From Ginglymostoma cirratum (lineage: Eukaryota): a stretch of DNA of 64,000 nt. Where the stretch lies: NCBI GenBank assembly GCA_024137785.1, contig JAHRHZ010000042.1:23222682-23286681 (forward strand), given 5' to 3'. The translations under genes and the position numbers were made by a program. A model generated the notes under the pieces. That model had not been told where the DNA came from and did no database searches. It saw only the letters and a program-made list of their open reading frames with translations. Of the stretch, positions 208 through 53,799 are shown in pieces. Numbering within the stretch: the stretch's first letter is position 1; each line of letters opens with the position of its first letter.

Positions 208-305
208 CTCGGGCTGTTGGTCGCAGCATTGTCGCCTTGGATGATGAATGACAATATCTGCATAGGACACTTCTTCCTCTATATCGCTGTATTCATTGAC
301 ATGAT
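208..305 (-). CDS. Cytoplasmic exon with tyrosine motifs (DHVNEYSDIEEEVSYADIVIHHPRRQCCDQQPE)
   Basis: 109 nt intron from the previous exon; acceptor aagcag|; open frame with VSYADI; ends at GAG|GTATGA, which is either a donor or a read-through to V then TGA at 202-204. Confidence 0.78.
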
Positions 306-414
306 CTGCTTTCAGTGATTCAAATAAATATATGTGTGTATATACATGCAATTATTGTAATATTAGGGTATTAATATTAAGGAAAGAATTTGAAGTCCAT
401 GAAGTTGAACCTAC

Positions 415-474
415 CTGTTGCATGTTTTGGATTGCTTGGTAGATTACTTCTCTTGACAAATGCATATATTATAT
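415..474 (-). CDS. Cytoplasmic exon with ITIM (x-IIYAFV-KRSNLPSNPKHAT)
   Basis: Acceptor tttaatttgcag|, donor CAG|GTAGGT; 60 nt, phase 1-1; I-x-Y-x-x-V motif. Confidence 0.75.
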
Positions 475-739
475 CTGCAAATTAAAGCAGAGTATGCAAA
501 TATTAAAGTGAACAAACTCCAAAACAGATAGAGAGATAGGTTTAGATGAAGAGGGCTGTGAGAAAACTCATGTTGGGCAGAAATGCTGACCTGTTTCTGT
601 TCTGGAAACGCTACATAAAACGTATTTTCTCCATTTCCTACTTATTTTTACTGCCCCTTTTTAAAATTCATCTGCTTCATAGATCACTTCTCAGATGTCA
701 AAAAATAAGGGTAACCACTCTCATTTGTCTGTTATTGCT

Positions 740-1130
740 CCCTCCACCACCGACGCTCAGTAGCAGCAGTGTGTACTACCTACAAGATGCACTGCAGAAA
801 TTCATCAAAGATCCTTAGACAGCCCTTCCAAACCCACGACCACTTCCATCTAGAAGGACAAGGGCAGCAGATATATGGAAACACTACCACCTACAAGTCC
901 CTCTCCAAGCTATTCACCATCCTGACTTGGAAACATATCGCCATTCCTTCACTGTTGCTGGGTCAAAATTCTGCAATTTCTTCCCAAAAGGCATTGTGTG
1001 TAAACCCACAGCAAGTGGACTGCAGCAATTCAAGAAGGAAGGTCACCACCCCCTTCTGAAGGGCAACTATGGATGGCTAATAAATGCTGGCCAGCCAGCA
1101 ATGCCCCCATCCCACAAATGAATAAATGAA
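740..1130 (+). mobile_element. LINE 3'-end fragment (CR1/L2 group); further copies at about 8960-9390, 15625-15965, 38400-39235 (+) and related pieces at 32510-33110, 50920-51180 (-)
   Basis: Shared sequence caagatgcactgcagaaattcacc...gggcaactagggatg...aataaatgctggcc repeated in the window. Confidence 0.75.
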
Positions 1131-3189
1131 AGAAAGGAGTACGGACAGAAAGTAGGAATATAGTGTTGTGATAGAGGATCAGCCAGGGTCATATTGAATG
1201 GCAGAACAGGCTCTAAGGGATGAATGGCCAACTCCTGCTCCTATTGTCTGTGTTTTTATGTGCCAGGTTTGGAATTTATTCCTTTACACTGGCAGTTTCT
1301 CTTTTGATTGCAACAAGCTTCTGGAGGACTTCTAAATAAGTAAATGGGTCATGTGCAGAATACACACAGTTGTGAGTACCTCACTAAGATTCTTTCGAAC
1401 AGGAAGAAAAAGTAACCATGCTCCAGATATAGTAATTCCCTTTGAGGTCAATTTAAAACTCCATCCCAATTCTTACAGATTCCGATAATTTCTTAAAATA
1501 GATTCTTAGGTAAACTTTTCTTAGTTGCGTTTGAACATTGAGTCAAGGATAAATTGTTCAGTTGTTAGGATTATAAGATCGGAGCACACATTTCTAGCAG
1601 CGGTCAATGGATAATATACACTCTTGGTGATTTAGTTTCTCTCTTTACTTGTGTGTGTGTTTCCTCCAGGAGGGTATCTTTATCCAATGTGGCAATGCTT
1701 ATGTTATCCCCCATGACATAGGAACCTAGGACGTGGGTAACATGATATTTAAAGAACCTACAGATGTTTATTACTGATCAATAATATATACAACTTATGC
1801 ATTCATAAGGACATCCTTATCTGGGGCTAATATAAAACTATTTAGTTACAAAGAGTACTGTGCTTCTCCCAGTGTGTCAAGCTTTAAGTGGCCCTAGTTA
1901 CGATGGAGCCTGAGACCTTTATTTGCACAAGTCACATGTTATGACACAGTGAAGATATCATGGATATCCCTTGTTAAGGTATACTGGCAAACTTACTTTG
2001 AGGTAGATCATGACATGTACCACAGTAAAACTCATCTAAACTGAGGTTTCCACAGTGCAGCTCAGCTGAGAATAGATATTTCATCAAACCTGGGACTTTC
2101 TTGTCCGAACACCAGTGAAAACTGTTGCAAACAAGCTTTAAAGTACTGATCACTGTCAAAAAATAGAAGCTAAATGATTGGTAACCCAGGGACATATCTG
2201 TTTATGATTGAAGTTTGCATGCTTTAGTATAACTCCTTTACTGTCAGAATACTATCGCACATTAACCACAAATGATTCAGAGGAATGAATGTAGCTCTGA
2301 ATCCAGTATCAATGACGCATTTATGTCTGCTATATCTGAGTAATGGTGCAATTTGTCAAAAGACTTGGCAGTTTAACTTCCTGATTTTCTGTGTAAAACA
2401 TCAATGGCCTAGTTTCATTGGTGTAATGGTTAGAAATTAAAAATGCATAGTTGCAATTGTTCTGGCAATCATTTCTTGGAAAACATATCAAGTTTGTGGG
2501 ATTATAATAAGATCACACATAATGATGCATAATTTAATGGTACCTCCATGCTTGACAAAGGTTATTGACTTTCAACTAGCATAACACTCAAATATTTTGT
2601 TCAGTCAAGTATAGAAAGTGCAAACCTTTGCTATAATGATGCAACAAAAAATAGGACCAGGTTTTGTTGACCATGATATGAAAGATGCATGTGAAAGCAT
2701 CTTGAAAAGTTTGTAAAATTTTTAAGTACAAAGGAAGTTGGGCAGCCTGAAAACCTGCAGCTGATGCAAAGAACATTTAGTCGAATACAGACCAGGATGG
2801 AATTCCACAATGATCTGTACGGGAATCTGAAAGAAGTCTCAACTTATAAGGCAGTAATAAGTTATGACAAGGTTAATATGTTGCCTTCACATGAAAGACA
2901 CATGAAGAGTGGTGACAAGTTGAAGACTATCGGCTAATGCAGTCCTGTTACATATGACAATGCCAAGGAGAATATGATGCTGGAATTAATCCCAATGTAT
3001 CAGATCAGCCCTAAATTTGTATTACCCTTAAAGGTAAAATTTGTTAATAAGTGAGGCCAAGGAGCAGACTTGGAAAACATCATAGTGGCATGACATGTTC
3101 ACCATTATTTCAGAAAAGTTACTCTCCTTTTTTAGCACTCAGTGCTTGATGGCGATGGTCAGGTAGGATACTAACAGACAGGGGTAGCA

Positions 3190-3287
3190 AGAGACAACAC
3201 AGTGTAGAGTTGAAGGAACACAGCAGGCCAGGCAGCATCAGAGGAGCAAGAAAGTTAATGTTTCGGGTCGGGACCCTTCTTCAGAAA
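3190..3287 (-). mobile_element. Solo Penelope pseudo-LTR fragment
   Basis: Reverse complement of the 4645-4740 terminal sequence. Confidence 0.75.
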
Positions 3288-3607
3288 CAGGCAGTCTGTT
3301 GGTTAGTCTCTAGCCAATGGGGATAAATGAATATTTAAAGAGTCACACAAGTGAAATTCCAATTTTAATTCATTTATTTTATACATGGGCGGTAGCAGCC
3401 TCGATTCTGCTCTTTGCTAATGTCCAGTGGAATAAAAATGCCTGTGTGAACACAATCTTAAAACACACTCTTTGAAGTGAAATGGCAAATTTGGAATGGA
3501 AGATACAACATGGCTGGTTAGGTCGAGTTGCATTTTCTGACAGACTCTGCAGCAATGTTTCAATTATTGTAATGAATTACCATTCAGCCCCAACACAAGA
3601 CTGCACA

Positions 3608-4770
3608 AATTACTAGATGAATATCTCACCCATCCTCCTGCAAGAATGTGATCCCCTGCTCCCAATTCCTCCGCCTCCACCGTGTCTGCTCACAAGATGG
3701 GACATTCCACTCCCACACATCCCAGATGTTCTCCTATTCCAAGGATCATAACAGCCCCCTGTCTGGTGATCAAAAATGTCCTCAACCACATCTCTTGCAT
3801 TTCCTGCACTTCTGCCCTCACATCTCTTCCCCCCAACAAAAATAAAGACAGAATCCCCCTTGTCCTCACATATCACCCCACTAACCTCCGCATCCAACAT
3901 ATCATTGTCTGCCACTTCTGCCACCTACAATCCGATCCCACAACCAAAGCGATATTTCCCTCCCCACCCCTATCTGCCTTTCATAGGGACCGCTCTCTCC
4001 GTGACTTCCTCATCCACTCCACACTCCCCACTTGCCCCACCACCCCCAGCACCTTTCCCTGCAACCACAGGAAGTGCTATACCTGCCCCTACATCTCTCC
4101 TCTCGTCTCCACTCAAAGCACAAAACAAACCTTCCATATCTGACAGGGGTTCACCTGCACATCCGTCAACTTGGTCTACTGTATCCGCTGCTCCCAATGC
4201 GGCCTCCTGTACAGTGGTGAGACCAAGTGTAGTGACCATTTTGTAGAGCATCTGTGCTCTGTATGTACCAAACGACAACACCTTCCGGTTGCCAACCATT
4301 TGAACTTTCCCTCCCACTCCCTGGGTGACATGTCCATCTTGGGCCTCCTCCAGTGTCACAATGATACCACTCGCAAACCGAAAGAGCAGCACCTCATATT
4401 CCACCTCAGGGGCCTACAGCCCAATAGCCCAAACATGGAATTCACCAGTTTTAAAATCTCCCCACCCCTGACCTCATCCTACGCCCATCCTCATCCTTGA
4501 CCTGACACAACCTGTCCATCTTGTTTCCCACCTAACCACCCCTCCCATCCCACTGACTAATCCCTACCTGCACTATCCCACATACCTTCCCCAGTCCCAC
4601 CCCTCCTCTCTCTATTTATTTCTGACTCCCTTCCCCCTCCCCATTCCTGAAGAAGGGTCCCAACCTGAAATGTCAACTTTCCTGCTCCTCTGATGCTGCC
4701 TGGCCTGCTGTTTTCTTCCAGCTGCACACTGTGTTGTCTCTGACTCCAGCATCTGCAGTTCTTGCTATCT
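3608..4770 (+). mobile_element. Penelope-like retroelement fragment (RT C-terminus, GIY-YIG endonuclease, 3' pseudo-LTR)
   Basis: RIPLVLTYHP and VYCIRCSQCGLLYSGET...HLPVANH motifs; terminal segment ctgaagaagggtccc...gcatctgcagtt. Confidence 0.9.
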
Positions 4771-7700
4771 CAAAGATTCAACTAGTTTTGTTTTCTAACA
4801 TTCAACTTTTTTCCTTATGTGTTGATAATGCAGCTGTTCACTAAGCACAGTAATCAAATTCTGAACTTGTTTCAGAACAGAAAAAGGTAAAGAGATTCAG
4901 GAATAATCGGTTCAAAGTCACCTCTTTCTTCTGAAGTTAACAACACTTACTACCTGGTCCATTTGTTCATGTCCTGAATTAAACAGGTTAGTTTCTGAAA
5001 GAACTCTATTTTATTTGCTCTTGAATGAATAGTATGAATGGCTTCCACCATCTTCTCTCAAGAATGTGTACCACACAGTTGGCAGTGCTGATTGAAACAC
5101 TGAACTGACTTTATTTGAGACGCAGAAGTCACATTACCAAGGCCCAAAGCAGGTTATCTTTTGAAGAAAATATTGAAACAAGAGCTTAGCTCAATTTGTA
5201 AATGTTGGTACATTCCAGATATTAAGTAGGCATTGCAATAAAACTCATCCCATTGCTGAAAGATCTTTAAAATCTAAGGTTTCAAAGAGCACAGTAGGGT
5301 TGCACCAAAAAAAGCAAGGTATTTAACCTTGGCTAGAAGAATAGAACCAAAGAAAATAACCTGTACTTGAAATGGGGTAAATTCCAAATTAAGACGGAGT
5401 AACAGTAGCTAAAATTTTTCATTATTTTTCAGCAAGTGAAGGCATTCTGCTGGCAGCCCAGTCAGAGTTCCAGTAGCTCTGGTGGTGGTCATTGGTTAGA
5501 CTGTAGCTGCAAATAGCAGCCACCTTACAGCCCAGTGGCCTTTAAGGACAGTTTAGGTAAATTAGGGCAGGCCAGGGCTACGTAGTTAGAGCCTGGTTAT
5601 TGGCACGTGGGCTGGGACGTTTGGGGGTAGTGATGGGTGGGGGAGTGGGGTGCTTAATCATGGAATACCAATCCTGATCTGGTCTTGAAGTTTCATTAAA
5701 GAACAGCCTGCTCTAACCTACTGGGTGGCACTGCCATAGTGTTGGGCCTGCCAAAGTGGACAAAATACCTGCACAGCTGCAAAGGTTCCACATAATTGGC
5801 TCATGAGAGGATCAAGCGACAAACTTTCCCACTGCTGGCAAGGTGGTACATAGCAAGAAGATGTCAAGCCTTCCCTGGCATTTGGGAGCTTCACAACCTC
5901 TTGCCACAGGGCCCAGAAAATTCCAAGCACTGTTACTCCATACTAATTTTGAATTTTCCCCTTTCAAGTACAGGTCATTGCCTCTGGTTCTCCTGTTCTA
6001 GACAAGGTTAAATAGCTTGCTTTTTAGTGCAACCCTACTATGCTTCATGAAATCTTAGATTTTAAAGATATTTTGCCCATGGGATGACTTTTATTGCAAT
6101 ATCTGCTTAATATCTAGAATGTATCAATAATTACAAATTGAGCGAAGTTCTTGTTTCAATATTTTCTTTGAAAGTTCTACTATTTGATCAAATAAATAGA
6201 CATTGCAGAACTCCAAACGATAATTCCAAAGTTCAGGGGATAGGTAGTGTTATTTTATTTGATCGCATAGATACATACTTACAATACTTAATAGATATAA
6301 TGCACATACCTGTTTCAGTGTTGCAATTTTCACTCCTGATCATGGTTTCTGGGCTTGAATAGATGGAAATAAGCAAAATTAGTGTCATTGAAGACACAGG
6401 AGTAGATGCATGAGCTTAATTTTACTTCTTCTAGATTCAGTCACGTTGGGTATAAGATCTAGACTTGACTGTCAACAATTTTTTAATATTTTAGAATGAC
6501 TTACAAGATGGTGCATCACAGCTTTCAGGTCTATTGTAAATCAGATTGACTTCTGTTACCTCACTTATGTTGTGATCATATGGTTGGGCAGACTGAGTTC
6601 CAAATAATAGGAACAACTCTTTCTAGTTCATCTTTATCCACACTTATTTTCCACTTAGAATAGATCAAAACACAATTATCCTTTTTGAAATATGTATTTA
6701 AATATGGAACATTTCATCAGTGCTGTGTCATTACATTTCTGGTTTCACAAGGGCTTCTGTACCAAATGCATTTGAAAATAAACTCCCATCTTGTAGCCTT
6801 GTCACACAAGAATGGCTCCTCTATTTGTTAAGATGGTGTGTGAAATATTTCTAACATGTCAGCACCGCTAAAATAGAAACAAAGACTGAAAAAATGCAGG
6901 TCGACCCAACCAGATAATAATGGAGTAGATAGTTAGTCTAATGATAAATAATTGCATGCTCAGGCACAGTTCGTACCTATGATTTCTTATGTATACCATC
7001 AAAGTTCCTGATGTGTCAGTTTATAGTCCAATTTTTGTTCCAAAGGAAATTTGGGATGAGGAACAAATGTTGGCCTTACTGATTGACTCTCACTTCACAT
7101 GAATGAGTAAAGAGAGAGAGTGTCCATATGCTTTTTTGATCAGTGAAAGAACCAAAGAAACTGCTTGCTATATGGAAGTTGTGATATAATGCAATGTACT
7201 GTAATCAAGTGTCATGGCGCAAACCATATGGTCTGCAATGGGAAAAGAGCAACTAAACAGGACACAGGTTCAATGATCCCTTGGAGATGTCAGGTTTCAG
7301 ACCACAGTTTCTTCAAAATTTAACAAGTAAATAATAGCACTTGATATGTGCAAGGCCAAGCTATATATTTAGCCCAAAGGTTAAGTACTCAGACCTCTGT
7401 TCAGCACACCACTCTCATGCATTGTCTGTCCAGCTTATAGAATGCTTAAAGGACAAAAATGGAGACAGACAGGCTACCAGCTAACAGGAAACACAGAAAA
7501 GTAAAAACATCAACCCGTTAATGAGTACTTGACTCACCCTTTCACCACAATGATGGAAATACCAAAAATTCCGAGAAATTGGATGACATATCCCTGCATG
7601 TGACATGTCCAATTTTCACTGGAGGGGCAAGGTTCAACTCTACATAGCATTTTTCAAGACTAGTACATAGTGAAGAGGAAAGGCAAAGCAACGATAGTGA

Positions 7701-8234
7701 AACCACAAATTACATAAGCCCCAAAATTAACTGTGGCGGTGAATAACCATTTCATTATCACCAAGCAGAGATCTGCATTTTTGTGCAACCCACTGTTATT
7801 TGCAAGCATACTTGCTATCGTGGTTGGTAAAATACAAGCTATTGTTACCTGCAGGTCCATATCACTTTACTTACAATTAGCAAATATGGGCAGCCATTCA
7901 TTACTTGTGGTTTTATCAATAGTTGTGTCAAATGAGGCCACGAAATGTCATGGGATTAACAGCTAATACCATTCTACTCTGAAACATTTAACTATATGAG
8001 ACCAGTGCAACACCTTGCATCAGAGTCAAAAATCCAGCAAGAGTCCAGTTCACTTTTGGAAGCTGTTAATTTTGAGTTTGAAGCTTCTGTATAATTTTCA
8101 ATTTGCATTTTAATTTTCACCATAAGAAATGTACACAGCAAGTCTGAACTAATGCTGTGTCACATCACAGACTTAGAGTACAGAAGCAGACCATTCAGCC
8201 CATTGCTTGTACTTTTGTAACAGCTACTCAGCAT

Positions 8235-10535: not shown

Positions 10536-10563
10536 CTTGGTTCAATGGATACATTAACTGTAT
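10536..10563 (-). CDS. Cytoplasmic mini-exon (D-TVNVSIEP-S)
   Basis: Strong acceptor tttattttcttttccag| and donor CAAG|GTAAGA; 28 nt, phase 1 to 2; compatible with the TM exon and the next exon. Confidence 0.7.
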
Positions 10564-36595: not shown

Positions 36596-39500
36596 GAGAG
36601 AAAGATCATAACACAAACAACAAAGTTTCAACCTGTTTACAATGACATTTGTAACAGAGACTTAATACCAGATAAATATCACTCTTTTCTTAACATTTTA
36701 CATTTTAAACAGCTGATTCTTTTCAATTTCTTTCTCTTGAACTGGTAAGTCCTTTCTTTTAATGATTCCTTTCCAAATCTCCTCACATAAACTTCTCACT
36801 GTTTCAAACTCTTTCATTTCTAACACATAGCAGACCTTTATCCAACTTCCACAACTTCAAAGTTCCATAGACTAGGAACCACTTCTGCTGAGGTAACTGG
36901 TTTCTCTCAAACAAACTGAAAAGCTGTTCTCCTTCTAGGAGAAAAAAAAAACTGAATTCTTCTGAACTAAACTTGCAACCTTCAGTTCTGAAGATAAAAC
37001 TAAACCAATTGTCTTAATGTTCTTACTCTACAAGTAATCACATTCTTTCTTGGAACTGATGTATTTATATCACAGCTCCAATTTGACTTTCTGACCTTTA
37101 TGAGAAAGACAATCAACCTGCTTCCATTTTAAAATCCAAATTCCAAAAACATAATAGAATATATTTAATAACCTTTTTATCATATAACTAACATAGTCTT
37201 TTGTCCCCCTATTAGTAGCAATGCTTTTTATCTGTCAATCACTTAGTTGAGATACTGATGTTTGCAGACAAATGCTCAATGCATTAGTCTGACATTTCTG
37301 TCTTCCGTTTTCATGTTGGCACTATACCATTTGATGTACAATAGGTTAGTGCGGTCATTAAAGTAGTTCATGAAGGAATACTGTGCTAACTGTTTAACTA
37401 CCAATTAAGTTGAGGTTTCATAAGTGCAACAGTGTCATTTTGGACATCTTTTATTTTCAGACAGTCATGACTTAAATTTTGCAAAGGTCTGAAAAGAGAA
37501 TGAGAAATATCAAGAAATGGTGGTCAGATGACATCACACTATGGTTACAAAAGTCTGTAAATTGTAGGAGAAAAGAAATGCAGAGGGAGGTAAGACATTC
37601 CACACTTCTGAGGTTTTGAAGTGGTAAGTTTTGATTTTGATACGCTATCAATACTGAGAGCAGGAAGTGTATGTAGGACAGTGTATTGGGATCTTGAACA
37701 AGACAGGAAAATTGATAACAAATAAAAAAGAATAATCATAACAAAATGTGAAGTTAAATAATTTCTGATGTACAACAATAAAACGTTCCAGTGCACGACA
37801 GTAATTTCAACTTTAATTGCACTGCAATGCACTGTCCTTTAGGTATAAGAGCAGAAATTGCTTTGACAACACAGCAGGTCTGGAAGCATTTGTGGAGAAG
37901 CAGTTAATGTTTCACATCCAAAGACACTTCTTAAGATTCCAAAGAAAAGTCTTTGAAATCGAAACATTAACTCTGTTTTTCTCTCTGCAGATGCTGTTAG
38001 ACCTGTTCAGATGATTTTTATTTCAATTTTCCAGCATATGAAATATTTTGTTTTTAATTTGACTGCCTTTTAGAAATCTGTGTCAACGGGCCCTGGTTAA
38101 GTCCTGCGTGTAATTTGATCCCATGTTTTGCATCTAGTTATTTATCAACAACTGAAATATGCGTAATATTAATTACAGCTTTAATTTCATATTCACAAAG
38201 GGGACGGACCTTTTCTCACCCTCCAGTCATCCTACACAATTGTCTCGATCGATGTCTTTACAATATTGTCAAAGCCTTTAATGCAACTTTTGCAGATACT
38301 CTCTGCATTCTGACATGTGAGCCGTTGTGTCCCTATGTTTCTTTCATGTTCAGTTTCCACGTAGTAACACTTCTGGTTGAATATTAGAGTTTATAAAATA
38401 TCAACATCCTGGTGGTTACCATTGTTCTGGAACTGAACTGGATTAACCATATAAGTACTGCGGATACAACAGCAGGTCAGAGGCTAGGAATCCTGCAGCG
38501 AGTAAATCACCTCCTGACTCCCTAAAGCGTGTACACTATTTACATAGCACAAGTCAGGAGTATGATGGGGTACTTGCCTGGAATGAGTGCAGCTCTCTCA
38601 CACAAGAAGCTTGACGTGATCCAGGACAAAGCAGCCCTCTTGATCAGCACCACATAGAAACATCCACCCCCTTCACCATGATGCTCAGTAGCAGCACTGT
38701 GTACCATCCACCTCAATATGAATAGCAGAATTCACCATCTTCTAGACTCAAGGCCACTACCATATAGAAGTACAAGGGCAGCAAATACAGGGGAAAACAA
38801 CCAGCACCTGCAGATTCCCCTGCAAGCCGCTCACAATCCTTACTTCTTTATTTTTCTACTTTATTCCTATGACCTATGATGCTGGATTTCTTTTTGTTTG
38901 TTGTTTTTTGTTTCCTAAGAATTTTATCTTAAGTATTTGTACTAGGTAAATTTGTCCCTGGGATTGTGCTGTAACGCAACGGCTATAAACTTTTCACTGT
39001 ACTCATTTGAATACATGGGACGATAAAGCTAATTCAATTCAATCCAATACACTTAGAAATATATTGCTGTGTTGCCGGATCAAAATCCTGGAACTCCCTC
39101 CATAACAGCATTGTGGATCTATCTACATCGAATGAACTGCAGTGGTACAAGAAGGCAGTTGCTATCATTTTCTCAAGGGCAGCTAGGGCAAGGTAATAAA
39201 TGCTGACGCAGCCAGCAACGCTCTTATCCCATGAATCAACTTTGGAAGTTACTGAAGTAAAAGAAAATTGAAATATGGTCAGATTCACCTCTTGCACCAG
39301 AGTCCAACCATGACTGCAAAACAATTAGTAAGTAATAGAAAATGTTGCTTATGTAGTATTTGCAAAAAATCATGTGGTATTTCTAGTTTTATTTATTACC
39401 TAATTTTCTGGTTTAGCAAATGATCACTCAGGTTTCAAAAGTCATAACACAAGTGATGAAAATCAGAGGACTAGGTTTTCAGCACACTGGCAAGCATTTC

Positions 39501-40849
39501 TGATGTGGTGAAAATGATAGAAGTAGCCTGACATCACAAGTACTGCACCCAAATTTGATACTTCCCATCTCTCCAGGTGGCATAATGAGCTCAGTTCAGT
39601 CATCACGCTTATGCAGATTCTGGAAGCAGCTGGACATTTAAATAACCAGCTGCCCACACTGAAATAGGCTTTTAGCGTCAGCGAAATGTAGGACGCAAAG
39701 TGTAGAGACTGACCATGTAACAGTAGGTCTGTTCTCAGTGCATTTCCTTTAGATAGCCAAGATACCCCTTCGGAGAATTGAAATACACATTATCGTTATG
39801 GACTGTCGACACCTTAGGTGTGGAGTCAGGGATCCTTTGGTCATGAGGGGAGTTGTCAGTTGTGCTTTGGAACTATCAACAGGGGAGGACGGGTGTGCAT
39901 AAAAGGTTCGTAAAGACTCAGAATTACTAAGAGATGTCAAGAAATGTATAGAACTGTCAGCTGGCATTTAGAAGTGCCAACCTGTCAAAGAGAGTCCATC
40001 TGTCAAAAAGTCCCAGGAATGTCAACAAGTTTCAAGAAGTGACTAAGAGTTCGACAAGCATTAACCTGTGAAGGAGTGTTAAAATATGTTTTCATTAATG
40101 TGAGTGCTTTGGTAACTACAGTGCAGTCTTTGACATGGAACTTTAAGTAATAGTGTTATATTTTTCCTTTCGGGCATGGGTGCTGAGGATGCTTAATGAG
40201 TTGAGATGATTGTAAAAGAGGGAAAAAGTGGTGGGTGGAAGTAAGCATGAACTTGGCATATGGGAAGAGAGGGCATTGAATATTGGTAAAAGGCATTAGG
40301 TTGCAATGGATGGCATGGGTGGGGTATAGAGTGTGTGGGATGATGAGAGTGGGCAGTGGTAAGCATAAGGGATATTTTACGTTTTAAACACAATTTTTAA
40401 ATGTTGGCAACAGTAGAGTCCTGAGGCAGGCTTTCTGCACAGTCCAACTCAAGAACTTGCAAACTCTTAAACTCTTCCGGGGTCACCCAGCCTAATTCCC
40501 AATCCAGCCCTTGTCCCCAAAGCAAAAATCAGAAATGCATGGCAGCTGATTTAAAGGTTAGATACAGAGCAGGGGCTTTGTCAGCTTCTGTGCGCCCGAA
40601 CCACAAATGTAAGTTTGGCTCAAATGTTTGTAAAAACATCTACAGAGCTTAGCCTGATTTGAAAAGAATACATAAGGCAGTGAAAGAATGGAACATGCAA
40701 AATAAGCTCAGGAGTAAGAACACTTATAAACACATGACGATGAAGGACTATTGTCACACTGGCTAGTGAAAACCACATTGTTTTACAGCTCGCTATTGAT
40801 CTCAATGTAAAGGTTAACACCTATAACCAAAGACTTGCTTTAAGTTTAC

Positions 40850-40951
40850 CTTTTAATTGTCTCTTCCAGATCAGACAAAAGTATATTGCTACCACACTGA
40901 TAAATCCAATAACACCAATGAGTGAAGATACAACGTAAAGCAACCAATGAT
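40850..40951 (-). CDS. Exon 5: transmembrane segment DHWLLYVVSSLIGVIGFISVVAIYFCLIWKRQLK
   Basis: Acceptor atttctttcacag|, donor AAAG|GTAAAC; 102 nt, phase 1-1; about 25 hydrophobic residues with no charged residue, followed by a KR..K stop-transfer. Confidence 0.9.
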
Positions 40952-41459
40952 CTGTGAAAGAAATAATAATTAACCTTGAAGTAATGATGAATGGCAACAG
41001 ATGCAAAATGTAAATAAAATGAATAATATTTAAAATGTTTGGAAATATTTCTGCGAATGTTATATGATTGCAAACTTCAAATTTTTGCTTGACAAAAATA
41101 TTATCATTTTCTTCAGAAATCATTACAACTTTTGTGCCTAACATACACTGCAGTTAGTAGATAAAACTGCACTACATTAGTTTTCTATTTTCTTTTCACT
41201 ACCTTACAAAGCACTGCAGAAAAGCAGAAGGACAGCTTAAATAGATTGATTCACAATGTGTATTAATTTGTAAATGATTAAACATCAGAAATAGGCTTAT
41301 TTACTATAGCTTTAAGTAGTTGAATATTTCAATTTTACAAATTCTGAAACAAATAAAGAAGATGCTAAATATAATTAATCTGTGTTCCTATTTCCTAAAA
41401 TAATTCTTCTGTAACAAGCATCAAGAGCTTTACACATGCATTAGTACATCGATCCTTAC

Positions 41460-41765
41460 CTTCCCAAAAAGCCATTAACGAAACACTACCGTTTGTCCAG
41501 CCATAGCTGTTATTTGCTACACACCAGTAAATTCCTGCATCTTGAGATTGGAAGTGTGCCATCGTTAATTTTGAACTGCTTGATCCAGTTGAAGTGTAGT
41601 TTGTCCAATTCTTCAACCATGTTACCGTGGCGACTGGATTACTATCCACAGAGCATCTCAGTTCCACAAATGAATTTTTGGGGACAGTGATACTGCCATT
41701 GGTCCCGAGATGGTAACTGTCATTGTTTTTCAACTTGTATGTTATTGTTGGATCTAGTGGCCCAT
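41460..41765 (-). CDS. Exon 4: third Ig domain, C2/I-type (CD22/Siglec/MAG-like)
   Basis: Acceptor tttatgtgtag|, donor GAAG|GTAAGG; 306 nt, phase 1-1; motifs LRCSVDSNPVATVTWLK and QDAGIYWCVANNSYG. Confidence 0.92.
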
Positions 41766-42036
41766 CTACACATAAAGAAAATGCAAACAATTTTTTGTAT
41801 AAACAATAACTCTCACACACACAGATACATGCTGGCCAATTAATATACGTAACATCTACAAATTACATCTACATATTACATAACACATTTATAAAAGAAA
41901 AACGTTTCAAATTGCTTCACAGAAGTCCAATCAGACAAACATTAACACTGAGCTAAGGAACAAAGTATAAGGAACTGCAGCTACAATCTTGCTCAAAGAA
42001 GAAGGCTGTCAGGATTGTTTTAAAAGAGAGTGGGGG

Positions 42037-42062
42037 GAGAGGGAGAGAGAGAGAGAGAGAGA
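42037..42062. repeat. (GA)n microsatellite
   Basis: Direct inspection. Confidence 0.85.
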
Positions 42063-42109
42063 CAGATGGGGGTATATACGGAGGGAATTTCGTATTTTGA
42101 CATCTACAT

Positions 42110-42490
42110 GATATATAAGGTGCATGAGATTCTGAGGAGAATTGACAGGGTAGATAGAAAGCAGCCGTTCTCCTCAGTTAGAATTTCAGTAACAAGGGGC
42201 ACACTTTTAAAGCTGTACATAGGAGTTTAAAGTGGTTTTGAAGAATTTTTGTTTTCACCAGAAGGTGGTGGGAGCCCGGAATGCACTTCCTGGGACAGCA
42301 GTTGAGGTGGATAATCTTGTAAAGTATTTTGAAAAAGTACTTCGATAAGCATTTGAAATTTCAAAGATTCGAGGCTATGGATCTAGTGCTGGAAAGTGGG
42401 ACTGGTTTAGATTAAATATAGATTTTTTTTTTGTTAGTGTAGACTTTATGGGCCAGAGGGCCTCTTCTACATTGCATGATTCTATGATCC
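42110..42490 (+). mobile_element. CR1 3' fragment within a larger decayed antisense LINE region (about 41900-44200)
   Basis: VHEILRRIDRVD remnant and tail gattctatgat. Confidence 0.65.
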
Positions 42491-44502
42491 AGCATATTTT
42501 GAATCAATTATGGATTGGAGAGGTCAATATTAGAGGGTTGTAGGTCTGTAGGAGATTGCAAAGATGGGCTGGAACAAGGCTATGGAGTCAGCAGAATGCA
42601 AGGATGAGAATCTTAAAATCAAGAGATTGGTGGACTAGAAACCAATACAAGTTAGTACACAGTGACATCAAAGAGAGTGGAACTTGGTGTGGTTAGGATA
42701 CATACCGTGAAGGCGGACAATATTGCCAGCTTGTCAGTAAGAGGTCATTCTGATAGAAAAGATACACGACTGGAAGCTGATCTCAGCATAAACTGGAATA
42801 AAATGACGCAAAATGTCTGTTTCACCCAGAGGCAATGATCAGGGAAGATGGATGGAATTTAGCAGGCAATGAAGCTTTTGGTGGGAGACAAATGCAATGG
42901 CATCAGTCTTTCAAATGTTTAATTAGAGGTCATTGTAGGTCTTCCAGAACTGGAGCTCAAATATGTCGTCTACCAAAAAACGGACATGGAGGAGTCAGGT
43001 GAGCGATGGCAATGCAAAGTTGGATATTGTTAGTATGCATATGAAATTAGCATTGTTTCTCAGGAAAATCTCAGCAATGTAGGTGACAGGTGGGAGAAGT
43101 TCAAAGAGAGATCCATGAGGATACCAGAGGTAATGGTGTCACACAGATATGAGTGAGCGTAAATGAGGGCAATTATACTTATTTGGCTAATAGAGGAAAG
43201 ATATTTGAGGAGTCCAGTGTGGTTGACTGCTGTCACATGCTGCAAAAAGATTGAGAAGGTTAAAGTGCAGGAGTATACCTGAGTCATAATTACAAATGAC
43301 TTTGCTTTGGTTTATTTCTATGCTGTAGCATTGGAACCCAATTGAAAAAGTTCAAACAAAGAGCAATATGAAAGATGGAGATGGTTATCGGAAGGCTTCG
43401 GAGAAGAAAGGGAAATTGAAGACATGTTTAGATTTTTGAGAAATGGTGATGTCATCAGATTTGACAATGAATAGCTGAACAAATTATGCATCATAAATGT
43501 TTATACCTTTGCCTTTTGGATTTAGAACGTGAAAGTGCTCACTGTGGTGGGGAAACCACTAAAGTGGGAAAGAGTACTAAGAAGAGGACCACCAAAGGCA
43601 TAGTTGAAGGAATGACTGATCAGATTTTTGGCTACATAAGTAGATAAGAAATGTAAGAAAAAAAGGTTGGACAATGCGGAGTTTGGAACTGCCACTACAA
43701 TGACAAAAGTGAATGCTTTCCCCATAAGTGGGCACAGAAGGACTGGGTTACCAGCTTGGAAGAAGGATGTACATAGTGTGGGATACAACCAAGTAATATG
43801 AGATTACATTGTTTGTGATTGGAATAGGGAAATTGGGAGGTTGCATAAGTTGGGCAAGTTGGACTGGCAACTGTGAATATGGATTGCAGAGTATATAGAG
43901 ATTGAGGGGCCAACAGTCAACAAGAGGGCGTGAACTTAGAGGAGAAAGATCAAGAATGGGTTACTGAGATAAAGAGCAAAATCATCAAAGATGAGAAGCT
44001 GCTCAGTGCAAGAAGCTATTGAAGGGATTCTTGAATGACAGAGCGAGCTCATGGTCTACTCTTGTTCCTGTTTTCTATGTTTCTATGAAATAGGTAGAGG
44101 CTTGAAAGGTGGTAAAGCTCTATGGAGCTTTTACAGGACAGATAAGAGGGATAGAACAAGATAAAGGGCAAAATATGCCAAAAATGTGAGTGGACAGACA
44201 TAACTGAGATTTGGTGATAAACCCAATGCTGTCAATTGGGCATTTTGGATGGGTCCGGTGATGGAAGGTATATTCAGACAGAATGACTGTTTTGATATGT
44301 TGTATACAATGCTCTATTGTAACAACAATTGTTTTGTATACAAACGGACACGGGGCAGTTCACAAATAGGAGCACGGCACAGACACTCCCTGGTTGTAAG
44401 CAGAGACTAATGAGGAGACAATAAGAAAAAGACCAGACTTAAAGTAGATATCTTTATCATTACATTTTATGCAATGGGCAAAATGCTAAAGATCATACTC
44501 AC

Positions 44503-44805
44503 ACATAACATCTAGTTTGATCTTTTTTGTTACTGGCTGTTTGAAAATGACATGATTTATCTGACACATACAGACAGTTCCATGGTCTGTCACTTGAGGG
44601 ATGATCTGAAATTGGCTGGTGACAACAGTTTTACCCTTAACAATTCCTTCCAAGGTTGAGACAGTGATGTTTGTCATCATGTTTGTTCCATTACAGGTCC
44701 AGGAAAAGGAGATGTTCTCAGAGCACAACCCCTGGACAGAGCAGGTCAGGACAGACTTTTGTCCAGCAACCAAACTACCATTCATAATGGAAATTTCAGA
44801 CAGTT
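44503..44805 (-). CDS. Exon 3: second Ig domain, C2-type (Siglec/CD33 domain-2-like, some C1 features)
   Basis: Acceptor ttctttccctcag|, donor ATGT|GTGAGT; 303 nt, phase 1-1; motifs GSLVAGQKSVLTCSVQGLC, FSW, PQVTDHGT, CQINH, TKKIKLDVMY. Confidence 0.9.
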
Positions 44806-45137
44806 CTGAGGGAAAGAAGAAAAGAAATACAATTTGTAATTTTGGTAAAATCGTGTCGCATCTGTAGTTAAATAAATTTTCATCTAGATTAAAGGAATCA
44901 AAAATCAAAATGTACGTTAGTGAATTACACTAATGTCATTTTAGCTAGCTGCTGTGTCAGGATCTTTTGCTGCAACTTTTCGATAGAAATTGTCTAATTA
45001 GAATGACTCACGTACCACACTCCTATCTTCCACTTTACTTACAAGGTAACTGTAATGCAACAGTAAGACAAGTTGATGGTGTATTAATTGCAGCGGAAGC
45101 TGGTTCTAAATGAGTATGTGTTGATCACTATATTTTT

Positions 45138-46020: not shown

Positions 46021-47094
46021 GAACAATTTCCATGTTGGTAGTTGGGTCGCTGTTGTGACTGAATACTAGCTCAGGCAGCATCCTGATGCCGATCAAGGAG
46101 CCACACTTCCATCTCATTTTAAACACCCACTGCCCCTCTTTGCAGTTCTCACTCCACAATGACAGTCTGTCAGCTGGAATTTCTTTCTATTTTTAAATTG
46201 TTGCTATGCCTTCAGAAGATATCTTAGCCACTAATCAGTCCGCAAATCAAAAAACATGTCACGTATCAGGCACCAATGCAACAGAGGGTCAGGACACAAA
46301 AATGTATGTGACATTGGAGTCCTGACTTAAAATTCAGTCAGTGGTGTATGAGTTTGTGTTCTTTTTGTTCACGTTGCACAATTATGAGTCAAATATTGCA
46401 AGTTTCTTTCTAGCAATTTTCACTGATTGATTTTAATTGGTGTTTTTACATTTTTTCCAATTGCATGAATAAAGCATCTTCATTGAAGCAAAACCTCCCA
46501 CGTATCCCACAGAATAATGATGGACATATTTGACACTGAGGCACAGAGCTATATGAATAAGTGATCATTAGCTTCAGCAAAGGGGCTTGTATCAAAAGAG
46601 TTGTAATAGAGAAGAAATGGAGAAATGAGAGGTTTAGGGAGGAATTTCCAAAATGCAGATCCTCGGCAATTGAAAACACAGCTGCAAATGGTGAGACAAA
46701 GCAACTCAAGATGAGTGAGTGAATTGAAAGAATCTCAGAGAGTTGTTGGGATAGGGAAAATCACAGAGATAGAGAGGAGTCAGGTCAATGAAGGATTTGA
46801 AAAAAGGAATGAACATTTAGAATTCTTGGCATTGATGAATTGGGAAGCACTGTTGGTCAATGAGCGCACGGTTGGTAGATTAATGGAATACGAGATTTTT
46901 TTTGTGCAACAGATGTGGACAATGTAATTAGCAAAATCTTTTTTTCTGGAGTGTCAATTAACAACTAACAGAAAAATGACAAATAACACAAATAGTGCAC
47001 GGCAAGATGTGAAACTCAGAAGAAAATAATAATCCCAAATAAGTTTTGAGATTCCTAAATAATTATGAATAGAATCAACAAAGCTATACTACTT

Positions 47095-47122
47095 CTGATG
47101 AAGGGTTTAGGCCCGAAACGTC
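47095..47122 (+). ncRNA. Minimal type-I hammerhead ribozyme motif in a solo Penelope pseudo-LTR (47090-47222)
   Basis: CUGAUGA-A-GGGU(UUAG)GCCC-GAAA-CGUC, with flanking ACUU/AAGU able to form stem I. Confidence 0.65.
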
Positions 47123-48158
47123 AAGTTTTCCTGCTCCTATGATGCTGCTTGACCTGCTGTGCTCATCCAGCCCCATGCTTGTTATCTCGGATTCTCCAGC
47201 ATCTGCAGTACCTTTTATCTCCTATACTGCAAATGTATTGTTTCTCTGCAAACCGGGTTTCTCATCTAATATGTGACACAACAAGACAGAGTGCTGCACG
47301 CTTTATTACTATTATTCATTAGTAGATCGCTCTCCTATGCCTGGATCAGTCTTACACAATACCATTAAGTACTGAAAACAGGGTGTGATTCCTGTAGTGA
47401 CTCTTTTAGCTTGAAGCTGCATTCTTTACATAGAAATTCTCACATTTACTTCCTGAAATCCCTGTTTGATATTTCCTTATACTTTATCACAATTTTGTCC
47501 AATTTAATTGTCGTCTGTTGATATATAACTTGGTTTCGATAAAGGGTTTGAAACAAAATATTAATCTAGCTCTTCTTACAGAAATCGAAGAACCAGCTAT
47601 TTATTTTCAACATTTGCTGGCTGTATAAAAAGTTGCATTATTGATTCCATATAATTGGTCATATATTGAAATACTGGATCAACTTTAGGTGTATTCAATT
47701 TTGAATTGAATTGCAAAGCAACAGATAACAAAGTCTTCAAAAGTTACATGTGCTTGTATGTAAGATAAACAGGTATAATACTTAAATAAATTCCATAAAA
47801 TTAAAGGAGCTGATGTCTTGTGGTATGAATAGAATAGACAATGAAAGTGGCAGAAATGCAAAATTCATTTAAGTGATAGCCTATATCTCCCCATTGGTTC
47901 CACAGTGGCAAGTTATCGTAAACCTGGTTCAAGAAACAATATTACAGACACACAATGAATTGCTTCCCGCATTCTTCTAGCTAGCAATAGTTTGTTTGAA
48001 TAATCTGGTCTGATATTGAATGTGCTTTCCAACAATGAATTATTTCAGAAATGGTTTGGTGTTAATATTACTGTACCCATAATGAATACAGACTTAGTGC
48101 TTTCACCCAGTACAATCAAATGTCTTTCTACTTATTACTTAAAATGTAAATACTTTAC

Positions 48159-48509
48159 CGTAAATTTGTATCTTTGTTCCTTGTCCTTTTCTCTCTAATG
48201 GAGGGTAGATATTCGGTACTTGCACCACACAGATATATTTATAAGCAGAATGATGAAAAGAAGCATTTTCAATCTTCAGTGGTATGGCACAAAGTTTGAA
48301 ATCATCCAGAGGACCATTAGGAACACAGGTCAGCTGCTTCTTCTCATAGGCGGTAATATTCCCTGTTGGTGGATCCCTCTTCCAACTAGCATGGACCCAG
48401 TCACCATCAGTTCCATTGTAAATCATAAATGTGCAGTTAATTGACACTAACTCTCCTCTCAAGGCAGTGACCAGAAGTGGCTGAGTCACCTCACCAATGA
48501 ACCGAACAC
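48159..48509 (-). CDS. Exon 2: V-set Ig domain with germline J-like motif (GVRFIGEVTQP...SINC...SWKR...YICVVQVPNIYPPLERKGQGTKIQIY)
   Basis: Acceptor ttccatcag|, donor TACG|GTAAAG; 351 nt, phase 1-1; canonical B-strand Cys, C-strand Trp, F-strand YxC and G-strand GxGT; inside ORF 48139..48531. Confidence 0.92.
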
Positions 48510-49168
48510 CTGATGGAATAAACAAATTCATTTTTAGCTGGCTTCAGTTAGAATTTCTTTCTAAAGAAATAGGAAACTTTGAAAACTTAAACAGCAGTGA
48601 ATTTGAAATACCCTTTGTGTTGGATCACATGTCAAAGACATCATTAAAAATACCTCTCCTCTCTGATTTAATTCTAAGCTACGCAACGGTTTGTTTCCAG
48701 GTTTTCTGCAGTAATTTTTTTTCGTGTTTTGAATTTGTTTCTTTTTATTAAACCGTATGGATAGGATGTCACCATCAAAATCCATTGGAGATCTTTATTT
48801 CCAGCTCGCTGAAAGTGGCTGCTATCAGGTTGAACCATGTGCAAAGACAGACCCACTTTTAATTGAAATCTAAAAAAAATCCTTTAAATATTCTGAATCC
48901 TGCCAGCGTTAGGGTTCACAATCAATATACAAAGTATCGTTTGAACTGGAATGTAACTTTTACACAGGAGGCTTAACCCAAATACCGTCATGCGGGCCTT
49001 TGAACAGTGATCTCAATCGAATTGTCCAAATGACATGGTTGTGTCTCACTTGCTTTCTCTGCAGTTCCATACCATATAGAAAAGCTGAAATATCTTAAAA
49101 GGGGTAATCGAATGCCTACAATGCCAGCACCAAATGAATGTACCAATGTTCTGAGCAGAGCATCTTAC

Positions 49169-49217
49169 CTTGAACGGCTGTTTGCAAAATGAAAAGCAGC
49201 TTCAGCAGGAGCTGCAT
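49169..49217 (-). CDS. Exon 1 (signal peptide) of IgSF receptor: MQLLLKLLFILQTAVQ-G
   Basis: ATG at 49217; 49 nt hydrophobic leader; phase-1 donor CAAG|GTAAG; joins in frame to the V exon. Confidence 0.9.
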
Positions 49218-53756: not shown

Positions 53757-53799
53757 CTTTTATTCCTAGATTTTGTTTCCTGTCTACTAACTAATTTTA

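What the first reader, a model, noticed from the sequence alone, without database searches (positions are those of the whole stretch)
208..49217. Candidate inhibitory immune receptor with a hybrid architecture: antigen-receptor-like VJ domain, Siglec-like stalk and ITIM tail
Seen: nine minus-strand exons with GT-AG sites and compatible phases (49+351+303+306+102+28+62+60+98 = 1359 nt, 453 codons, no stop). The order is leader, V, C2, C2, TM, then a tyrosine-motif tail. The ectodomain has 14 N-x-S/T sequons by my count and the TM has no charged residue. Known: ITIM-bearing IgSF receptors recruit SHP-1/2; germline VJ domains occur in NITR, SIRP, NKp30 and the CD28 family; Siglecs use V-C2-C2. 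Inference: I cannot assign this combination to a mammalian ortholog, so it may be a chondrichthyan-specific or ancestral leukocyte checkpoint receptor family.
Basis: partly seen in the sequence, partly recalled or inferred. Interest (0 to 1): 0.88.

Follow-up and report, generated by a model that had tools for sequence, protein, structure and literature searches.

The report
Shark inhibitory V-C1-Ig receptor gene
This is a real, transcribed shark gene for a cell-surface immune receptor with an antibody-like tip, two further immunoglobulin domains and an inhibitory tail.

Summary
The minus-strand gene is real. Spliced RNA contigs from three studies join exons 2-3-4-5-6. Annotated 490-500 aa relatives in more than 12 elasmobranchs carry ectodomain and tail in one protein.

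The conserved exon 7 is 6353-6310 (44 nt, SPETMIRSENCNTET), so the "YYDTEF/ASYGNL" tyrosines do not exist. The gene runs off the window; relatives add about 45 residues with a further SEYSxV motif.

- **V domain:** germline VJ type with a canonical disulfide, an invariant extra Cys pair, a [Y/F]PP loop and GxGT. It has no Siglec hallmarks.
- **V-D2 pair:** aligns colinearly with Ig light chains and SIRPα (V-C1).
- **D2-D3 pair:** aligns colinearly with MAG and Siglec-8.
- **Conserved tail tyrosines:** xIYAxV, VSYADI and SEYSxV (ITIM/ITSM).

Homologues exist in coelacanth and sturgeon, so the family is ancestral, not shark-specific. Two species have TM-arginine, tail-less (activating-type) members. 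The best reading is an inhibitory paired-type receptor with an unknown, probably non-sialic-acid ligand. I found no paper on it. Earlier scan notes cover this window only.

The parts
49169..49217 (-). Exon 1: start codon and leader peptide (49 nt, ends in phase 1)
   Evidence: Read, with a GTAAG donor. It matches the leaders of the relatives. A near-identical copy lies at 59282-59234.
48159..48509 (-). Exon 2: germline VJ-type V-set domain (351 nt). It has 4 invariant Cys, an IYPP loop and the J-like motif GQGTKIQIY.
   Evidence: (E = 3.9e-62 to whale-shark XP_020370730.2). RNA loose ends at 44806 read the end of this exon. The AlphaFold model has pLDDT 86.5.
44503..44805 (-). Exon 3: D2, a constant-type Ig domain (C1-set / CD80-like C2-set), 303 nt
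   Evidence: Pfam C1-set E = 3.6e-7 and C2-set_2 E = 6.3e-5. PDB hits are Ig constant domains, CD22 d2 and SIRPγ. Fold ties with IgY CH, CD22 d2 and Necl-4 d2. The spliced joint 44503/41765 is seen in three runs.
41460..41765 (-). Exon 4: D3, an I-set Ig domain, 306 nt
   Evidence: Pfam Ig_3 E = 6.3e-13 and I-set E = 2.8e-10. PDB hits are contactins, MAG d3 and CD22 d6-7. The spliced joint 41460/40951 is seen in two runs.
40850..40951 (-). Exon 5: uncharged transmembrane segment plus KRQLK stop-transfer, 102 nt
   Evidence: Read. It is 94% identical to whale shark. RNA contigs run from it into exon 6.
10536..10563 (-). Exon 6: 28-nt tail mini-exon (DTVNVSIEP)
   Evidence: Relatives have DPVNVSIEP. 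RNA loose ends after exon 5 read this exon letter for letter in runs X1 and X9.
6310..6353 (-). Exon 7 (corrected): 44-nt tail exon, SPETMIRSENCNTET.
   Evidence: tblastn of whale-shark, zebra-shark and horn-shark proteins. AG/GT sites and phase fit. The X9 contig continues CC after exon 6, as this exon begins.
415..474 (-). Exon 8: tail exon with IIYAFV (ITIM here; TIYAxV, an ITSM consensus, in most relatives)
   Evidence: It is 95% identical to whale shark. The Tyr and Ala are invariant in the family.
208..305 (-). Exon 9: tail exon with NEYSDI and the invariant ITIM VSYADIVI. It ends at a GT donor, so the CDS continues off the window.
   Evidence: It is 97% identical to whale shark. E-V-x-Y-A-D-I-V-I is invariant from sharks to coelacanth.
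58063..59282 (-). Upstream duplicate of the 5' end: an intact leader copy (59282-59234) and a decayed V exon (58383-58063). It is not part of the coding model.
   Evidence: The V copy has 16-, 1- and 13-nt deletions, stops in all frames and has lost the B-strand Cys. The promoter/leader block is 92.9% identical over 778 bp.

Best explanation
The locus is the (probably nurse-shark) member of an old, unnamed family of type I membrane receptors.

**Architecture**
- Leader.
- A germline-joined VJ-type V domain.
- A constant-type (C1-like) Ig domain.
- An I-set Ig domain.
- An uncharged TM.
- A tail built from mini-exons.

The tail carries three family-conserved tyrosine motifs: xIYAxV (ITIM/ITSM), VSYADI (ITIM) and, beyond the window, SEYSxV.

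**Shown**
- The gene structure.
- Its transcription and splicing through exon 6.
- Its relatives in elasmobranchs, coelacanth and sturgeon.
- The absence of Siglec V-domain hallmarks.
- Tail-less family members with a TM arginine in two other species.

**Inferred**
- The V domain binds a protein ligand, not sialic acid.
- Src-family kinases then phosphorylate the tail tyrosines.
- SHP-1/SHP-2 (and possibly SAP-type adaptors at the ITSM) dock there and damp activating signals in the leukocyte.
- The receptor is the inhibitory arm of a paired-receptor family.
For: **One gene, expressed**
- Spliced contigs of 1367 nt (X1), 1295 nt (X9) and 479 nt (X3), from three studies, show joints at 44503/41765 (all three) and 41460/40951 (X1, X9).
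- Their loose ends read the end of V exon 48159 on one side and exon 6 on the other.
- Full-length predicted proteins in more than 12 species carry the same V-D2-D3-TM-tail order. They match the window's exons at 84-97% in whale shark.

**Domains**
- Pfam and PDB searches.
- The family profile matches Ig light chain VL-CL, IgA1 heavy chain VH-CH1 and SIRPα V-C1 over positions 23-221 (E = 1e-14 to 1e-15).
- It matches MAG and Siglec-8 D2-D3 over positions 130-340 (E = 4e-25 and 5e-20).

**Not a Siglec V domain**
- There is no Pfam Ig_CD22 hit, whereas teleost Siglec/CD22-like proteins hit it at 1e-12 to 1e-14.
- The V profile against their V domains gives E >= 0.01.
- The canonical B-F cysteines are present, and no Arg is invariant in V.

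**Tail**
- Y397, Y431 and Y481 (whale-shark numbering) and EVxYADIVI are invariant or nearly so.

**Paired forms**
- P0030 and P0031 end in a TM with Arg and have no tail.

**V evolves faster than D2**
- 84-85% against 92-96% among close species. Against Hemiscyllium it is 56% against 75%.
Against: - No protein-level, cell-type or ligand data exist.
- The inhibitory function rests on motif knowledge alone.
- Exons 7-9 are supported by conservation, splice sites and two RNA letters only, not by a contig across them.
- Both long contigs stop at the exon 6/7 boundary. That could mean alternative splicing there.
- The last exon(s) lie outside the window.
- The polyA raw-read run (X12) showed almost no reads here, so expression is not general.
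- An activating partner was not shown in this genome.
- The ligand class is unknown. Homophilic adhesion, as in PECAM-1 or CEACAM1, is not excluded.
Confidence: 0.72

Rival explanations
1. It is a true, if divergent, Siglec: a sialic-acid-binding lectin of the CD22/MAG/CD33 kind, as NCBI's automatic names say.
For: - Relatives are named 'sialic acid-binding Ig-like lectin 5/8/12/13/14' or 'MAG-like'.
- D2-D3 aligns colinearly with MAG and Siglec-8.
- hhalign to a trout Siglec-like protein gives E = 1.7e-12.
- The tail pairs an ITIM with a membrane-distal xEYSxV motif, as in CD33-related Siglecs (my own knowledge).
Against: - The V domain lacks every Siglec mark I could test.
- There is no Pfam Ig_CD22 hit, unlike real fish Siglec/CD22-like proteins.
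- The V profile against their V domains gives E >= 0.01.
- The canonical B-F disulfide replaces the Siglec intrasheet one.
- The F strand has Y-x-C where the trout protein has Y-x-F-R.
- No Arg is invariant in V.
- hhalign to a tortoise SIRPα-like protein is just as good (E = 1.6e-12).
Confidence: 0.07
2. It is an offshoot of the SIRP family (V-C1-C1, ITIM tail, paired activating forms) whose third domain was replaced by or diverged into an I-set domain. It would then bind a CD47-like ligand.
For: - V-D2 matches SIRPα residues 5-205 in one stretch (E = 1.7e-14; E = 7.5e-11).
- hhalign to a tortoise SIRPα-like protein gives E = 1.6e-12 over 354 columns, including the J motif and the C1 motifs.
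- It has an ITIM tail, and the family has TM-Arg members.
Against: - D3 is I-set, not C1.
- V alone matches the SIRP-like V domain weakly (E = 7.5e-4 over 45 columns).
- Ig light chains match V-D2 as well as SIRPα does.
- Earlier notes describe a separate large SIRP-like V-C1 family in this genome (not tested here).
Confidence: 0.1
3. It is chiefly a cell-adhesion molecule of the nectin/CADM or PECAM/CEACAM type (V-C-I ectodomain, homophilic or heterophilic adhesion) that also signals through ITIMs.
For: - The sturgeon homologue is auto-named 'cell adhesion molecule 2-like'.
- The D2 fold ties with Necl-4, PVR and nectin D2 (Z = 10-11.5).
- The V profile touches nectin-3 at E = 0.045.
- V, constant-type then I-set is also the nectin layout (my own knowledge).
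Against: - No nectin or CADM appears among the 60 best PDB profile hits.
- The tail has no likeness to CADM tails.
- TM-Arg tail-less members and a faster-evolving V domain are typical of immune paired receptors.
Confidence: 0.08
4. The model fuses two genes: an Ig ectodomain gene and an unrelated downstream tail, 30 kb apart.
For: Intron 5 is 30 kb of transposon-rich DNA. Exons 6-9 are tiny.
Against: - RNA contigs run from exon 5 directly into exon 6.
- More than 12 species have the same tail behind the same ectodomain.
Confidence: 0.02

Closest known systems
Siglec family (MAG/Siglec-4, CD22, Siglec-8; fish CD22-like proteins)
   Same: - V followed by a constant-type domain and an I-set domain.
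- D2-D3 aligns colinearly with MAG 119-306 and Siglec-8 151-332.
- The tail combines an ITIM with a distal xEYSxV-type motif.
- Automatic annotation gives these names.
   Different: - The V domain has the canonical disulfide, a J-like GxGT strand and an extra invariant Cys pair.
- It has no Ig_CD22 signature and no conserved F-strand Arg.
- Sialic-acid binding is therefore not expected.
SIRPα / SIRP family
   Same: - A germline VJ domain on a C1-type domain.
- V-D2 is colinear with SIRPα 5-205.
- An uncharged TM with a multi-ITIM tail.
- The family also has charged-TM, tail-less members.
   Different: - The third domain is I-set, not C1.
- V-domain likeness is weak.
- The tail motifs and mini-exon tail are the family's own.
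Ig light chains / TCRα (rearranging antigen receptors)
   Same: - The best sequence and fold matches of the V domain are TCRα V-J and Ig VL.
- V-D2 is colinear with VL-CL.
- D2 has the C-x-V/I-x-H motif, and in relatives the GFYP motif, of C1 domains.
   Different: - V and J lie in one germline exon, so there is no rearrangement.
- E-values for V alone are marginal (0.002-0.07).
- There is an extra I-set domain and a signalling tail.
CTLA-4 / CD28 family
   Same: - A [I/V]-[Y/F]-P-P loop directly before a GxGT G strand.
- A second Cys pair between C' and D (CTLA-4 has the like; my own knowledge).
- The ESM-Atlas first hit is a CTLA-4 cluster (0.92, 197 of 256 features).
- CTLA-4 is the first non-rearranging V domain in the V-only profile search, aligned end to end at E = 0.02.
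   Different: - The family is defined by a single V ectodomain (PMC11599192). This gene has three Ig domains.
- The motif is YPP[L/V]E, not YPPPY.
- CTLA-4 and CD28 are absent from the top 50 fold matches.
- The statistics are at lead level only.

Membership tests
Siglec | N-terminal Siglec-type V domain (Pfam Ig_CD22-like signature; non-canonical intrasheet disulfide in place of B-F) | tested here: not met
   Neither P0001 nor P0017 hits Ig_CD22, whereas trout and other fish Siglec/CD22-like proteins hit it at 6e-12 and 8e-14. Canonical INC...YIC cysteines are present and invariant. The V profile against Siglec-like V domains gives E >= 0.01.
Siglec | Conserved sialic-acid-binding Arg on strand F | tested here: not met
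   No Arg is invariant in the V domain across 13 or 24 family members. The F strand reads Y-x-C-x-V where the trout Siglec-like protein has Y-x-F-R. That part of the alignment has low confidence.
Siglec | Constant-type Ig domains behind V that resemble Siglec D2-D3 | tested here: met
   The family profile matches MAG 119-306 (E = 4.3e-25) and Siglec-8 151-332 (E = 5.3e-20) as single two-domain stretches. As single domains they are no closer to Siglecs than to SIRP-like, B7-like or generic I-set domains.
SIRP | VJ-type V domain followed by a C1-set domain | tested here: met
   D2 passes Pfam's C1-set cut-off (30.9 bits against 21). V-D2 is colinear with SIRPα 5-205. hhalign to a SIRPα-like protein gives E = 1.6e-12.
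SIRP | Second C1-set domain as the membrane-proximal domain | tested here: not met
   D3 is I-set / Ig_3 with no C1-set hit. Its best PDB matches are contactins, MAG d3 and Robo.
CD28/CTLA-4 family | Single extracellular V domain (Quiniou et al. 2024, PMC11599192) | tested here: not met
   There are three Ig exons. The paper's abstract states that each family gene has a single V domain.
CD28/CTLA-4 family | [M/L/I]-[Y/F]-P-P-P-Y loop with a GxG G strand (the CTLA-4 mark in PMC11599192) | tested here: inconclusive
   The family has [I/V]-[Y/F]-P-P-[L/V]-E-x-x-G-x-G-T, with P102, P103, G108 and G110 nearly or fully invariant. The third Pro and final Tyr are absent. CTLA-4 matches at E = 0.02, and the Atlas lead is.
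ITIM-bearing inhibitory IgSF receptors (functional class) | Uncharged TM and at least one (I/V/L/S)xYxx(I/V/L) motif in the tail, conserved among relatives | tested here: met
   IIYAFV and VSYADI are in the window. Y397, Y431 and Y481 and EVxYADIVI are conserved. The TM has no charge.
ITIM-bearing inhibitory IgSF receptors (functional class) | Phosphotyrosine-dependent recruitment of SHP-1/SHP-2 | not testable with these tools
   This needs phosphopeptide pull-down or co-immunoprecipitation.
Paired (inhibitory/activating) receptor families | Close relatives with the same ectodomain, a charged TM residue and no inhibitory tail | tested here: met
   P0030 (Heptranchias) ends ...IWIFVIRFIAVAAFIFILTTLSCLVNC. 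P0031 (Pristiophorus) ends ...IWSFIIRSIAVAAYILILITLNCLV. Both species also have ITIM forms (P0021, P0045). This was not shown in this genome.
Rearranging antigen receptors (Ig/TCR) | Separate V and J segments joined by recombination | tested here: not met
   The J-like GQGTKIQIY is contiguous with V inside one 351-nt exon, bounded by ordinary splice sites.

The most novel reading that the evidence does not exclude
The V domain may be a true relative of the CTLA-4/CD28 lineage: a [Y/F]PP loop, a GxGT strand and a C'-D cysteine pair. Here it sits on a C1 domain and an I-set domain. The family would then be an ancient 'long' checkpoint receptor that binds B7-type ligands. It would survive only in elasmobranchs, coelacanth and sturgeon, and would link the single-V CD28 family to VJ-C1 molecules of the antigen-receptor/SIRP kind.
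Probability: 0.12. Interest if true: 0.75.

Novelty: new variant of a known kind. Interest (0 to 1): 0.45.

Why it matters
- **Annotation:** the family is filed under misleading Siglec, MAG or CADM2 names in at least 14 species. Anyone counting Siglecs in sharks will be misled.
- **Evolution:** its spread (elasmobranchs, coelacanth, sturgeon; none found in teleosts or tetrapods) marks it as an ancestral jawed-vertebrate receptor that most bony vertebrates seem to have lost.
- **Architecture:** it adds one more non-rearranging VJ-C1 molecule to those used to reason about where antigen receptors, SIRPs and Siglecs came from. Here the VJ-C1 unit carries an extra I-set domain and a three-motif inhibitory tail.
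- **Function:** a fast-evolving V domain with activating-type siblings suggests a ligand under host-pathogen or self-recognition pressure.
- **Limits:** it is still one of many such receptor families in this genome, and its function is only inferred.

Tried and rejected
Rejected: it has no match in any relative, it is one of 12 chance candidates, and the RNA continues CC.
2. **Frog 'V-domain' hits (P0007, P0012, P0014).** Rejected as relatives. The matched domains are C1-type (GYFP...YICVVEHP), so this is a local look-alike.
3. **Fold searches.** The V model and the D2 model gave only broad ties: TCR/Ig V, PD-1 and SIRP for V; Ig C, CD22 d2, Necl-4 and MHC II for D2. No family can be assigned from fold.
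4. **V-only profile from five partly truncated relatives.** This failed, because the profile kept 380 positions. A two-sequence V profile worked but gave only marginal E-values.
5. **Atlas search with the tail of P0001.** Nothing usable; scores were at most 0.77.
6. **Other D2, D3 or TM exons in the window.** tblastn with the activating-type members found none.
9. **Three literature searches.** None found a paper on this family. The CD28-family survey (PMC11599192) does not cover it.
10. **Spliced model.** Every search used single exons by reference, or the full-length proteins of other species that the tools returned.

Full report
**What is in the sequence.**

I read the minus strand and found the exons at these places: exon 1 49217-49169, exon 2 48509-48159, exon 3 44805-44503, exon 4 41765-41460, exon 5 40951-40850, exon 6 10563-10536, exon 8 474-415 and exon 9 305-208. 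Each has an AG acceptor behind a pyrimidine tract (exon 1 has the ATG) and a GT donor. The phases fit.

Exon 9 ends at a donor, so the gene leaves the window. The TM has no charged residue. The window has no N.

**The one wrong exon.**

A scan for open AG...GT frames shows how weak small-exon calls are here. About a hundred 28-mers fit in the 40 kb, and twelve 62-mers fit in the 10 kb below exon 6.

Instead they match 6353-6310 (SPETMIRSENCNTET against whale-shark SPKTMIRNENCNTES). That exon has proper AG and GT sites and the same entry and exit phase.

The in-window CDS is therefore 1341 nt. The motifs YYDTEF and ASYGNL are not part of the protein.

**Transcripts.**

Ten runs of 100-900 million letters hold the whole V exon. 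That is far too little sequence to cover a shark genome, so these runs are most likely RNA. I laid four runs on 38900-44899.

- Contigs of 1367 nt (X1) and 1295 nt (X9) skip exactly 40952-41459. Those two and a 479-nt contig (X3) skip exactly 41766-44502. The skipped ends are CT..AC on the plus strand, which is GT..AG on the minus strand.
- Their loose end at 44806 is the reverse complement of ...AAAGGACAAGGAACAAAGATACAAATTTAC. That is the end of V exon 48159, not of the upstream pseudo-V.
- Their loose end below exon 5 reads, reverse-complemented, TGTATCCATTGAACCAAG, which is exon 6. The first ten letters of exon 6 were laid on the intron start with three mismatches.
- In X9 two more letters follow, CC.

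Junctions 2/3, 3/4, 4/5 and 5/6 are thus shown in RNA. Junctions 6/7 to 8/9 rest on conservation.

- Both long contigs stop at the exon 6/7 border, which may mark a splice branch.
- The polyA raw-read run X12 had almost no reads on these exons.

**Relatives.**

HMMER with the V exon against 1.8 billion representatives found 14 proteins. The best is whale-shark XP_020370730.2 (E = 3.9e-62, V exon 84-86% identical by method; 494 aa). Further searches with that protein, a family alignment and the coelacanth member followed.

- Full-length members appeared in zebra, epaulette, cat, basking, white, horn, sevengill and saw sharks and a houndshark. They also appeared in skates, a manta and an electric ray, in the coelacanth (P0017, 501 aa) and in a sturgeon (P0041, 480 aa; hhalign E = 4e-47 over 411 columns).
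- Their database names are 'sialic acid-binding Ig-like lectin 5/8/12/13/14', 'myelin-associated glycoprotein-like', 'sialoadhesin-like', 'cell adhesion molecule 2-like' or 'uncharacterized'.
- All carry V, D2, D3, TM and tail in one chain.
- I found none in teleosts, tetrapods or chimaeras. The searches are not sensitive enough to prove absence.
- Frog hits were C1 domains with a local look-alike and were dropped.
- An earlier scan note names the genome as nurse shark. The 84-97% identity to whale and zebra shark fits that.

**The domains.**

*V domain*
- It passes only weakly as Pfam V-set.
- Its best PDB sequence matches are TCRα V-J and Ig VL (E = 0.065 alone; E = 0.002 with a two-sequence profile).
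- Its model (pLDDT 86.5) superposes best on TCR and Ig V domains. PD-1 and SIRPα are within one Z unit.
- Four cysteines, a [Y/F]PP loop and G-x-G-T are invariant or nearly so in 24 sequences.

*D2*
- It passes the Pfam C1-set cut-off and also hits CD80-like C2-set.
- Relatives have the C1 motifs G-[FL]-Y-x-x-N-I-S-x-x-W and C-x-C-Q-I-x-H.
- Its model ties with IgY/IgM constant domains, CD22 d2, Necl-4 d2, MHC II, SIRPγ d2 and MAG d2.

*D3*
- It is a plain I-set domain.

*Domain pairs*
- The family profile searched against the PDB shows two colinear two-domain likenesses.
- Positions 23-221 (V-D2) match Ig light chains, IgA1 heavy chain VH-CH1 and SIRPα.
- Positions 130-340 (D2-D3) match MAG and Siglec-8.
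Whether it reflects exon shuffling or common descent from one V-C-I ancestor cannot be told from these data.

**Why it is not a Siglec.**

- Real fish Siglec/CD22-like proteins hit Pfam Ig_CD22 at 1e-12 to 1e-14. Family members do not.
- The V profile finds their V domains only at E >= 0.01.
- The V domain keeps the canonical B-F disulfide.
- No arginine is conserved in V.
- hhalign of the whole family is as good to a tortoise SIRPα-like protein (E = 1.6e-12) as to a trout Siglec-like protein (E = 1.7e-12).

**Tail and mechanism.**

The tail in the window reads as follows. Slashes mark exon borders, and I read the border codons by eye, exon by exon: KRQLK / DTVNVSIEP / SPETMIRSENCNTET / D-IIYAFVKRSNLPSNPKHAT / D-HVNEYSDIEEEVSYADIVIHHPRRQCCDQQPE.

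- Three tyrosines are conserved across the family: xIYAxV (ITSM consensus TIYAxV in most species, ITIM IIYAFV here), VSYADI (ITIM, unchanged even in the coelacanth apart from S to P) and SEYSxV in the last, off-window exon.
- NEYSDI is not conserved in rays.
- From established knowledge of ITIM/ITSM receptors, I infer tyrosine phosphorylation followed by SHP-1/SHP-2 docking, with SAP-type adaptors possible. This step is not shown.
- Two species have siblings that end in a TM with an arginine and no tail. That is the usual mark of an activating partner.
- Among close species V is less conserved than D2, as expected of a ligand-binding tip under pressure.

**The CTLA-4 lead.**

- The [I/V]-[Y/F]-P-P loop before GxGT and the second cysteine pair recall CTLA-4.
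- A language-model search puts a CTLA-4 cluster first (0.92).
- CTLA-4 is the first non-rearranging V domain in the V-only profile search, aligned over its whole length at E = 0.02.
- Against this, the CD28 family is defined by a single V domain (PMC11599192).
- CTLA-4 is not among the top 50 fold matches.
- The motif lacks the third Pro and the final Tyr.

I keep it as the novel case, not as the reading.

**Surroundings.**

About 10 kb upstream lies a duplicate of the 5' end.

- The promoter, leader and start of intron 1 are 92.9% identical over 778 bp.
- The leader copy is intact.
- The V copy has three deletions, stops in every frame and no B-strand cysteine.

The rest of the window is transposon-derived ORFs. 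There are no other family exons.

**Limits.**

- Run identities are coded, so tissues are unknown.

**Verdict.**

This is a real, expressed gene. The family is predicted in public databases under wrong names, and I found no paper on it.

Noticed in passing
window 58063-59489 (leader copy 59282-59234; pseudo-V 58383-58063): A tandem duplicate of promoter, leader and V exon lies 10 kb upstream. The leader copy is intact. The V copy is decayed: 16-, 1- and 13-nt deletions, stops in all frames and the B-strand Cys lost. The promoter/leader block is kept at 92.9% over 778 bp, against 86% for the V exon. The epaulette-shark model P0019 has two V domains in tandem, and the first lacks the F-strand Cys.
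   Followed up: partly
window about 44716 (exon 3, codon TGC in QGLCSEN): This genome has Cys where nearly all relatives have Tyr or Phe of the C1-set G-[FL]-Y motif. That is why D2 has five cysteines here. RNA contigs show no variant at this place. It falls at the position of the Siglec D2 cysteine (GMCSG in the trout protein), probably by coincidence.
   Followed up: partly
P0030 (Heptranchias perlo) and P0031 (Pristiophorus japonicus), C-termini: These family members have the same V-D2-D3 ectodomain. They end in a TM segment with an arginine and have no cytoplasmic tail, so they are activating-type partners. I could not read that DNA.
   Followed up: partly
window 10536-10563 / 6353 (exon 6/7 border): Both long RNA contigs (X1 and X9, different studies) stop at or two letters past the end of exon 6. 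In de Bruijn contigs this often marks a branch, so alternative splicing after exon 6 is possible.
   Followed up: no
window 40500-40900 (start of intron 5): Low-depth unspliced contigs (X3) and a few polyA reads (X12) cover the exon 5 / intron 5 border, with a T>C difference at 40727. Read-through would end the protein as ...KRQLKGKLKASLWL-stop, a tail-less form. It may equally be pre-mRNA.
   Followed up: no
window 38900-39300: Depth is very high in all four runs (hundreds to thousands), with many different loose ends. This is a highly repeated, transcribed element inside intron 5, not part of the gene.
   Followed up: no
window 52300-54400 and 59400-60350, 3600-4500: Long ORFs with reverse-transcriptase-like and Cys/His-rich translations (LINE-type retrotransposon remains) fill much of the introns and the upstream region.
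   Followed up: no
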